Shown here in pieces: positions 34,772-37,483 of a stretch of DNA of 64,000 nt. Made by a program: the position numbers and the translations under genes. The notes under the pieces are model-generated. The model had not been told where the DNA came from. It did no database searches and was given only the letters and a program-made list of their open reading frames with translations. Within the stretch, counting starts at the first letter, position 1, and the number at the start of each line of letters is the position of its first letter. Origin of the DNA: Caecitellus pseudoparvulus (lineage: Eukaryota > Protista > Bigyra: Bicosoecida); contig CBFFRQ010000087.1 of assembly GCA_965644315.1 (NCBI GenBank), positions 62,001 to 126,000 of the forward strand, in the 5' to 3' direction.

Positions 34772-37483
34772 TTAAAAGACGCTGGGGTAGCTGTCCTGGT
34801 AGCCGTGGACCTTGTCCAGGCCGGCCTTGGCGTGGTAGGCGCCCAGCACGGCAGCCTTGCTCTCGCCGGCCTCCTCTGCGGCCTCCATCTGGCCCAGGTA
34901 GTCCTTGAGCTCCAGGACAAAGTCGATGTCACGGCGCTCGACGTTGGCAGCGGCGGAGTCATCAGCCTCGGACGGGTCGGCGGTGGCCAGGGCCATCTCC
35001 TTGGCGCGGGACACGGCCTCGTCGGCGTCACCCACCATGTAGAAGGCGTTCTCGGGCAGGTCGTCCAGCTCACCATCGATGATGCGGTTGAAGGACTTGA
35101 TGGAGGTCTCCAGGTCCACGAAGCGGCCAGGCTTGCCAGTGAACACCTCAGCCACGGAGAAGGGCTGGGACAGGAAGCGCTGCAGGCGGCGTGCGCGGGC
35201 GACGGTCAGCTTGTCCTCCTCGGACAGCTCGTCCATGCCCAGGATGGCGATGATGTCCTGCAGGGACTTGTACTCCTGGAGGATCTCCTGCACCTTACGG
35301 GCGGTGCCGTAGTGCAGCTGGCCGATGATGTTGGCGTCCATGAGGCGGGAGGTGGAGTCCAGGGGGTCCACGGCGGGGTAGATGCCCAGCTCGGAAATGG
35401 CACGGGACAGGACCGTGGTGGCGTCCAAATGCGCGAAGGTGGTGGCGGGGGCAGGGTCAGTGAGATCGTCTGCCGGCACGTACACGGCCTGCACGGAGGT
35501 AATGGAGCCCTTGGAGGTGGAGGTAATGCGCTCCTGCAGGGCACCCATGTCGGTGGCCAGGGTGGGCTGGTACCCGACGGCGGAGGGGATGCGGCCCAGC
35601 AGGGCAGACACCTCAGAGCCAGCCTGGGTGAAGCGGAAGATGTTGTCAACGAACAGCAGCACATCCTGCCCCTCGGCGTCACGGAAGTACTCGGCGACGG
35701 CGAGGCCGGTCAGGGCGACACGGGCACGGCATCCAGGGGGCTCGTTCATCTGGCCGTACACGAGGCAGGCCTTGGAGCCGGGGCCGTCGATGTCAATGAC
35801 ACCAGACTCAATCATCTCGTGGTACAGGTCGTTGCCCTCACGGGTGCGCTCGCCGACGCCGGCGAAGACGGAGTAGCCACCGTGGTTGTTGGCGATGTTG
35901 TTGATGAGCTCCATGATGACGACGGTCTTGCCGACACCAGCGCCACCGAAGAGGCCGATCTTGCCACCCTTGGAGTAGGGCGCGAGCAGGTCAATGACCT
36001 TGATGCCGGTCACCAGCATGTCATCGGCGTCACCCAGCGTGCTCAGCTCAGGGGGGGAGGCGTGGATGGGTGCCCAGTGCTCCGTGTACACGGGTCCGCG
36101 CTCGTCAATGGGCTCGCCAGTGACGTTCAGGATGCGGCCCAGGGTGGCGGGGCCGACGGGCACGGTGATGGGGGCGCCAGTGTCCAGGACATCGGAGCCA
36201 CGGGCGAAGCCGTCAGTGGGTCCCAGGCAAATGGTGCGCACCATGTTGTCGCCCAGGTGCTGAGCGACCTCCAGGGTGATCTCCTGCTCGGAGGACTCGA
36301 AGACCTCCAGCTTCTCCGCCTCCTCGGGGGAGATGAGCTTGCTCTTGTCGGGCACGGCGGCCAGGCGCTCCTCCAGCTCGGCGATGATGAGCTCCTGCTG
36401 GGCGATGGCCTGGGACAGGCCCTCGGAGTCAGGGGAGTCAATCTCGGCCTCCAGCTTGGCCAGGTCGGCGGCAGCCATGTGGCCGTCGGCCTTCAGGTAC
36501 TTGAGGGTCTCCTCGCGCACCTGCTTGAACTCGCCGGAGCTAGCCCACTTCTTCTCACGCTCCTGCAGCCAGGCAATGCGCTCCTTGGCGTCGGCGATGT
36601 GCTTGGGGATGAGGGAGGCCTTGCGCAGCTCGTCGTTGGCCTTGTTGTACGTGGGCACGTTGACACGGATGCGCAGGGCGTTCAGGATCTCGGGCACATC
36701 CTCAACCTGGGCGGGACAGGCGTGTGCGGAATGTGAGCAGGGCGGGGCATGCCGGGAAGGCGGCATGCGGCACGTACATCGTCAAACTCAACATCGACGA
36801 CAGCGCCAATAATCTGTGAGGTGCAAGGGAGGGTGCAGGTTGAGGCGGGAGCGTGCGGGGTGGGCAGCAGGGCAGGCGATGGGAGAGCGGCCGAGATGGT
36901 GTGGTAGGCGCACCTCCGCCGGTGCGCGCCAGACATGCACGCAGCCAGCGCCACGAGCATCACCACCTTTGACACTACAACATGCCATGCTCACAACAAG
37001 CAGTAGTGGCCACACGGCACAGGGCGGACGCTGGCATCGGCAGGGAGCAGTGAGGCGGGGCAGGTGAGGCACTGCACCACGCACCTGAGCCACGCGGCCC
37101 TTGACAGCGGTGGGGCTGTCCCAGGTGACCAGGTGGGGGGCCACAGCGGTGCCCTTCTGGGTGCTCAAGGCTGTGGGGGTGGGGGAGGGGGGCGCGTGCC
37201 GAGTGTGCTGCGGGAGCGTCTGCCTTGAGGCATGCGCGGCAATGCCGCAGTTCCGCCACAGTCCGGTGGAAAGGGCGCCGTGCGCGGCGAACGCGGCGCG
37301 GCACAGCAGCCCACATACGCCAGCACACATGCCAAGCATGAAGCGTGTGAGCTGGGCCGCGACCGGCAGCGAGCGTCAGCGCTCAGAGCCGCGGACGAGC
37401 GATGTGGTGTGGCAGGGGCTGGTGCACGTACCACGTCGGCCGGCGGCAGAGGCCGCTGCCGTCACACGGCGCACAGCGTGCAT
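34772..37483 (-). CDS. ATP2: Mitochondrial F1 ATP synthase beta subunit with a large crown insertion and a C-terminal extension
   Basis: Exons 37483-37432, 37170-37085, 36813-36778 and 36706-34772 splice in frame (702 aa). Transit peptide [20 protein letters not shown], then [15 protein letters not shown], Walker [37 protein letters not shown] and FYMVG. Confidence 0.98.

What the first reader, a model, noticed from the sequence alone, without database searches (positions are those of the whole stretch)
36281..36667. F1 ATP synthase beta carries a ~120-aa helical insertion in its N-terminal beta-barrel crown
Seen: 129 residues ([16 protein letters not shown]...[12 protein letters not shown]) lie between the conserved PEILNALRI and [10 protein letters not shown]. 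They are charged and helix-favouring, with two amphipathic runs ([19 protein letters not shown]; [21 protein letters not shown]). They show the same strong C/G-ending codon bias as the catalytic core and lack intron-like C-rich tracts. Established: beta is highly length-conserved and this loop is normally under about 10 aa; it belongs to the membrane-distal crown, near where OSCP docks on the alpha subunits. Inference: three coiled-coil hairpins would project from the top of F1. They could act as a built-in stator or accessory element (functionally like euglenozoan p18), or as a contact between ATP synthases that shapes cristae. I do not know a described beta subunit with this feature.
Basis: partly seen in the sequence, partly recalled or inferred. 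Interest (0 to 1): 0.9.

Follow-up and report, generated by a model that had tools for sequence, protein, structure and literature searches.

The report
Bicosoecid ATP synthase crown arm
In a group of bacteria-eating flagellates (Cafeteria and kin), the catalytic subunit of the mitochondrial ATP-making motor carries a built-in helical arm of about 125 amino acids that no solved ATP synthase has, and it probably braces the motor head.

Summary
The genome's only F1 beta gene has 129 codons where other betas have 6-13, in the crown hairpin (human QGRETR loop). It is not an assembly error: independent metagenome assemblies encode the same protein. An intron is unlikely: a spliced transcript of a close relative keeps it. 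About 70 related proteins carry it at 126-131 aa, including Cafeteria burkhardae and Bicosoecida sp. CB-2014. On a core-only tree they form one clade (100/100). AlphaFold (pLDDT 86) gives an extended beta-ribbon, an antiparallel coiled coil and a two-helix tip, with no specific fold or family match.

The same betas carry a ~70-aa C-terminal extension. The mitochondrion-encoded alpha has four conserved insertions, one in the equivalent crown hairpin, and OSCP is lengthened, not truncated. The best reading is a structural brace on a remodelled F1 surface, analogous to p18 and the Polytomella/Acanthamoeba beta tails. Direction and partner of the arm are untested. No RNA reads were available for this species. 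New variant of a known kind.

The parts
37432..37483 (-). Exon 1 of F1 beta (atp2): start codon and Arg/Ala-rich mitochondrial-type presequence
   Evidence: ATG and GTACGT donor read from the sequence; similar N-terminus in relative P0004; targeting role inferred
37085..37170 (-). Exon 2: N-terminal segment up to the first barrel strand
   Evidence: CAG acceptor and GTGCGT donor; 81% nt match to spliced contig L004
36778..36813 (-). Exon 3: barrel strands ([12 protein letters not shown])
   Evidence: Splice sites; match to L004
34772..36706 (-). Exon 4: rest of the barrel with the insert, nucleotide-binding domain, C-terminal helical domain and tail (644 aa)
   Evidence: Pfam PF02874, PF00006, PF22919; only beta in the genome
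36281..36667 (-). 129-aa crown insertion (14.5 kDa, net charge -9) in the barrel hairpin loop
   Evidence: 126-131 aa in about 70 homologues; charge and mass
36647..36676 (-). Outgoing strand of the extended beta-ribbon (exon-4 residues 11-20)
   Evidence: AlphaFold models
36536..36643 (-). Long helix H1 (residues 22-57) with the conserved ND..R..SL[LI]P motif and a heptad pattern
36443..36532 (-). Tip helices H2 and H3 (residues 59-88)
36359..36415 (-). Return helix H4 (residues 98-116) after invariant Gly-Leu; pairs antiparallel with H1
   Evidence: 74 residues superpose on a two-helix hairpin at 2.8 A
36272..36301 (-). Returning strand of the beta-ribbon (residues 136-145), leading into LEVAQHLG
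35924..35947 (-). Walker A loop GGAGVGKT, intact; the catalytic GERTREG Glu and DELSEED are also intact
34772..34984 (-).

Best explanation
This is the normal, sole catalytic beta subunit of the mitochondrial ATP synthase of a bicosoecid-type flagellate. It carries an ancient, clade-wide structural domain grown out of a barrel hairpin in the F1 crown. Shown: coding insert of fixed length, one origin among the sampled betas, intact catalytic core, co-occurring beta tail and alpha insertions. Predicted: beta-ribbon stalk of about 10 residues per strand, a coiled coil of about 36 residues and a short helical tip, roughly 6-9 nm long (estimated from residue counts). Inferred: three arms per F1 sit on the non-rotating crown and pack against the neighbouring alpha subunit's insertions and/or the lengthened OSCP. 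With the beta C-terminal tail they would form an outer brace that stiffens alpha3beta3 and helps hold it to the single peripheral stalk, with at most one of the three copies touching the stalk. It would not take part in catalysis.
For: Single beta gene, so no canonical paralogue was found. Kept in spliced or transcriptome-derived sequences: L004 lacks both introns of its 92%-identical genomic relative L007 yet keeps the insert; MMETSP, EukProt and MERC entries carry it. Length 126-131 aa at 40-80% identity. One clade at 100/100 on a tree built without insert and tail. Confident fold with conserved heptads and hinge residues. Alpha has four conserved insertions, one of about 16 aa in the equivalent crown hairpin with a conserved F[IV]PS..RL motif, and a divergent N-terminus. 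OSCP is about 320 aa. Precedent: beta tails wrap alpha in Polytomella (10.1101/543108) and Acanthamoeba, where one copy touches the stalk (PMC13632647); p18 covers alpha in Euglenozoa (PMC6930080).
Against: No complex could be modelled, and the full-length model failed in the core (pTM 0.27), so the direction and partner of the arm are unknown. Net charge varies from -14 to +3 between subclades. Rough dN/dS in the insert is about 0.6 against 0.11 in the core (one pair, inflated by GC3 saturation). Co-occurrence with the tail and alpha insertions reflects shared descent, not independent cases, and the alpha and beta homologues were not matched species by species. No RNA or protein data for this species.
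Confidence: 0.5

Rival explanations
1. The arms project outward and link or space neighbouring F1 heads within or between dimers, setting the geometry of ATP synthase rows on tubular cristae.
For: Long coiled-coil arm at the membrane-distal rim with tightly fixed length; only one of three copies can meet the stalk, leaving two free; bicosoecids have tubular cristae (PMC6723347); subunits e and g were largely not identified in stramenopiles (PMC10214729).
Against: Ochrophytes with an 8-aa loop also have tubular cristae; F1 heads move during catalysis; the tip surface is the least conserved part.
Confidence: 0.18
2. The arm is a docking post for a partner protein, such as a matrix enzyme or a regulator, like the MDH held above OSCP in Acanthamoeba.
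For: Exposed helical domain with conserved polar residues at its base (N, D, R, S and D-K); precedent in PMC13632647; no IF1 found by Pfam here (an uninformative negative).
Against: No partner identified; conserved positions are mostly core heptads and hinges; charge is not conserved.
Confidence: 0.14
3. A largely neutral accretion: an insertion tolerated at a permissive loop, kept only because it must fold or because partners became dependent on it.
For: The loop is an insertion hot spot (6, 8, 9, about 13 and 86 aa elsewhere); weaker constraint than the core.
Against: No loss or shortening among about 70 sequences across deep branches; invariant residues in the insert.
Confidence: 0.13
4. 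The segment is removed, either as an intron in this species or by cleavage after import, leaving a normal-size beta.
For: A few splice-like sites inside it; no reads for this species; euglenozoan alpha is cleaved at a loop (own knowledge).
Against: Kept in spliced transcripts of relatives; protein-level conservation; no intein end residues or HINT fold.
Confidence: 0.05

Closest known systems
Mitochondrial F1 beta (human 8h9e, bovine 1bmf, yeast 2hld)
   Same: Three-domain layout, Walker A, catalytic Glu, DELSEED; E about 1e-220 over residues 134-572.
   Different: Loop of 6 aa against 129 aa; no 70-aa tail.
Polytomella and Acanthamoeba beta with C-terminal extensions (10.1101/543108; PMC13632647)
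   Same: A lineage-specific helical addition to beta itself, three per F1. The bicosoecid tail (about 70 aa, two helices) resembles theirs in position.
   Different: Those are terminal tails; the crown domain here is internal and has no counterpart. The bicosoecid tail profile does not match the amoebozoan-type tails in hand (best E 0.085 in 21 sequences), so they are probably convergent.
Euglenozoan p18 (PMC6930080)
   Same: Three extra helical units on the outside of F1, one of which helps clamp the stalk.
   Different: p18 is a separate subunit bound to alpha (PPR-like, own knowledge); no sequence or fold match.
Longer crown hairpin of Bacillus PS3 and chloroplast beta
   Same: Same loop lengthened (about 13 aa in PS3, derived). 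From memory, these were proposed to stabilise the crown (Groth and Pohl 2001; paper not held).
   Different: A few extra residues, against a folded domain of about 125 residues.

Membership tests
F1 ATP synthase beta subunit | Barrel, nucleotide-binding and C-terminal helical domains | tested here: met
   PF02874, PF00006 and PF22919 over cut-off
F1 ATP synthase beta subunit | Walker A GGAGVGKT, catalytic Glu in GERTREG, DELSEED | tested here: met
   Invariant or nearly invariant in alignments
F1 ATP synthase beta subunit | Partner F1 subunits encoded (alpha, gamma, delta, OSCP) | tested here: met
   alpha is on mitochondrial contig C213
F1 ATP synthase beta subunit | Assembles into an active alpha3beta3 motor | not testable with these tools
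   Needs biochemistry
Spliceosomal intron | Absent from mature mRNA | tested here: not met
   Kept in the spliced contig L004 of a close relative; own-species reads unavailable
Intein | Cys/Ser start, His-Asn end, HINT beta fold | tested here: not met
   Sequence ends, helical model, no Pfam match
p18-like F1 accessory subunit | Separate repeat-fold subunit bound to alpha | tested here: not met
   Internal domain; no match by profile or fold
Fused known ATP synthase subunit (IF1, b/h, d) | Detectable homology to the subunit's family | tested here: inconclusive
   No hit of 53 insert sequences to these Pfam families, nor of the profile to PDB chains; short coiled coils are hard to trace
Beta with alpha-wrapping C-terminal extension (chlorophycean/amoebozoan type) | Helical tail of 58-118 aa after the last conserved helix | tested here: met
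   65-77 aa tail with predicted helices; no sequence homology detected
Beta with alpha-wrapping C-terminal extension (chlorophycean/amoebozoan type) | Tail wraps the adjacent alpha subunit | not testable with these tools
   No complex prediction available
Bicosoecida (identity of the organism) | Beta groups with Cafeteria and Bicosoecida sp. CB-2014; mtDNA uses UGA for Trp and has atp1 next to atp6 | tested here: met
   species not identified, 18S not compared with a reference set

The most novel reading that the evidence does not exclude
Bicosoecids have a new ATP synthase architecture in which three 6-9 nm arms grown from the catalytic subunits take over much of the anchoring normally done by the alpha N-termini, or tie neighbouring motors together in cristae rows. 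The catalytic subunit would then itself be a stator or oligomer-forming element.
Probability: 0.22. Interest if true: 0.85.

Novelty: new variant of a known kind. Interest (0 to 1): 0.64.

Why it matters
F1 beta is among the most length-conserved proteins. Structures show protist novelty added as extra subunits or terminal tails; none in the PDB copy searched has a folded domain inside the beta crown. No beta hit in that search was recognisably from a stramenopile, and Sinha and Wideman (PMC10214729) name stramenopiles as a structural gap. Cafeteria burkhardae has a public genome, so the prediction is cheap to test: a 73-74 kDa beta and three large densities on the F1 rim. The insert is also a candidate shared derived character for bicosoecids, and it marks a loop where a whole domain can be placed on the motor without harming the catalytic core.

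Tried and rejected
As the operators asked, the spliced model was not joined: exon 4 was searched by reference, and the upstream barrel strands through a relative's protein (P0004). The full-length AlphaFold model failed in the core. Pfam, PDB profile, Foldseek, VIA-align and ESM Atlas searches gave only generic coiled-coil matches; the best Foldseek row (4dci, E 0.02, TM 0.26, rmsd 11.5) was rejected. Pfam searches for IF1, b and d in the genome found nothing and are uninformative. Ten literature searches found no description of the insert; the library lacks most subscription papers. Rejected: assembly artefact, intein, expressed canonical paralogue (the other hits are V-ATPase A and B), replacement for a truncated OSCP.

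Full report
Observation. The finding lies in a nuclear F1 beta gene on the minus strand with four exons: 37483-37432, 37170-37085, 36813-36778 and 36706-34772, all with GT donors and CAG acceptors, 702 codons in all. Bases 36667-36281 give 129 in-frame codons between PEILNALRI and [10 protein letters not shown]. Pfam places the resumed barrel domain after the insert, followed by the nucleotide-binding and C-terminal domains. In human beta the same spacer is six residues. Among the non-insert betas returned by a profile search it is 6 in 68, 8 in 8, 9 in one and 86 in one. GC3 is 0.95 in the insert and 0.87 in the core.

Artefact, intron or paralogue. Two independent metagenome assemblies, 98% identical to the window, encode the same exon-4 protein. 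The genome has one beta; the other hits are V-ATPase A and B, and the insert profile matches only this locus. Reads for this species could not be obtained. The splicing test therefore rests on relatives. Contig L004 (2238 nt) is 92% identical to genomic contig L007, lacks both L007 introns, which sit at the positions of window introns 1 and 2, and keeps the whole insert. An intronless gene copy is a formal alternative for L004, but transcriptome-derived entries from MMETSP, EukProt and MERC also carry the insert. The insert has some splice-like sites, so partial splicing in this species is not formally excluded.

Distribution. Searches with the insert found a family at 41-79% identity. A profile search separated insert-bearing betas (1008 bits and above, apart from three duplicated or over-long canonical entries) from nearly all others (959 and below). 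Length is 126-131 aa, apart from two gene calls of 177-180 aa that appear to read through an intron. Named carriers are Cafeteria burkhardae/roenbergensis (KAA0147670.1, EP00749) and Bicosoecida sp. CB-2014 (A0A7S1G9L3). Brown algae have an 8-aa loop. A tree of the 413-column core, with insert and tail left out, puts all 36 carriers on one branch at 100/100. The outgroup holds few identified stramenopiles, so the clade's outer limit is open. The assembly's mitochondrial contig uses UGA for Trp and has atp1 next to atp6, as described for bicosoecids (PMC6723347). The organism is most likely a bicosoecid; the species was not identified.

Structure of the insert. AlphaFold on a 53-sequence alignment gave pLDDT 86 and pTM 0.66. 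The two barrel strands are extended by about ten residues each. A 36-residue helix follows, broken by an invariant proline, then two short tip helices, an invariant Gly-Leu, a return helix and a short helix before the returning strand. Conserved hydrophobic positions fall in heptads, and conserved polar residues cluster at the base. About 74 residues superpose on a plain two-helix hairpin at 2.8 A. No specific match was found: Foldseek best E 0.02, VIA-align best Z 7.9 at rmsd 7.4, Atlas TM at most 0.43, no consistent Pfam family. From residue counts the arm is roughly 6-9 nm long; this is an estimate, and its direction on F1 could not be computed because the full-length model failed in the core.

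The same betas end in a 65-77 aa tail with a conserved motif and two predicted helices. Of 73 insert-bearing sequences, 69 have the motif; three others are cut short and one has a variant tail; no beta without the insert has it. Alpha, on the mitochondrial contig, has four insertions of 14-19 aa relative to solved alphas, one in the hairpin equivalent to the beta insertion site. All four recur in four related alphas from metagenomes, and the crown insertion also in a fifth, partial one; their N-termini lack the usual OSCP-binding pattern by eye. OSCP is about 320 aa by my exon reading, against 157-252 for the matched PDB chains. Gamma and delta show no obvious large additions in the exons read. 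So the outer surface of alpha3beta3 and its cap appear remodelled together.

Mechanism. The catalytic motifs are intact and the crown is the static reference part of F1 (PMC6597759), so a catalytic role is unlikely. In other protists, additions to F1 lie on the outer face of alpha and stabilise the head or its link to the stalk: the Polytomella beta tail, the Acanthamoeba beta tail, one copy of which touches the stalk, and euglenozoan p18. I infer the same kind of role here, reached from the crown end (0.5). Rivals are links between neighbouring motors in cristae rows (0.18), a docking post for a partner (0.14), neutral accretion (0.13) and removal by splicing or cleavage (0.05). Against a precise binding surface, net charge ranges from -14 to +3 and a rough one-pair dN/dS is 0.6 in the insert against 0.11 in the core.

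Novelty. No beta chain in the PDB copy aligns to the insert. Literature searches found no description, and the survey by Sinha and Wideman never mentions Cafeteria, bicosoecids or insertions in its main text. The sequences are public and annotated simply as beta. The library lacks most subscription papers, so a passing mention may exist. Lineage-specific additions to protist ATP synthases are a known theme, so I rate it a new variant of a known kind: a real, apparently undescribed and unusually large one. Interest 0.64.

Steps left out. The joined spliced protein was not searched. Read mapping was not possible. No step needed referral.

Noticed in passing
window 34772-34984 (-): About 70-aa C-terminal extension of beta with a conserved motif, shared by the insert-bearing betas.
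   Followed up: yes
L012:1426-3180 (-), contig C213: Mitochondrial alpha (585 aa, code 4) with four conserved insertions and a divergent N-terminus; the adjacent atp6 is 367 aa, unusually long at its N-terminus.
   Followed up: partly
L035:30-1901: A related alpha with the same insertions is 66% GC and has a presequence-like N-terminus, suggesting atp1 moved to the nucleus in one lineage of this group.
   Followed up: no
L009:657-1968: OSCP of about 320 aa in four exons, with an N-terminal extension and a probable internal insertion.
   Followed up: partly
L016:868-3168 (contig C42): Long nuclear ORF with a weak 40-aa match to alpha (E 2e-4) and a second short match near its end; possibly a highly divergent alpha-like paralogue.
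   Followed up: partly
P0224 (JGI, 962 aa): A beta in the amoebozoan-like branch of the tree has an unrelated 86-aa low-complexity insertion in the same loop and a tail of about 400 aa.
   Followed up: partly
P0164-P0226: About 20 betas without the crown insert have 70-130 aa helical tails; one is from Phalansterium solitarium (Amoebozoa).
   Followed up: partly
window 38186-42200: A NOP2-like RsmB/RsmF methyltransferase lies head to head with beta, an arrangement kept in relative L007; an ADP/ATP carrier-like gene follows it.
   Followed up: partly
window 20728-34230 (-): A 4500-codon uninterrupted ORF with Gly-Thr-Pro-Tyr repeats near the start and several hydrophobic segments at the end; looks like a large surface protein.
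   Followed up: no
contig C213:19014-23096 (-): A 1361-codon mitochondrial ORF not assigned to a known gene; rps3 (634 aa) and an rps4-like ORF (759 aa) are also long.
   Followed up: no
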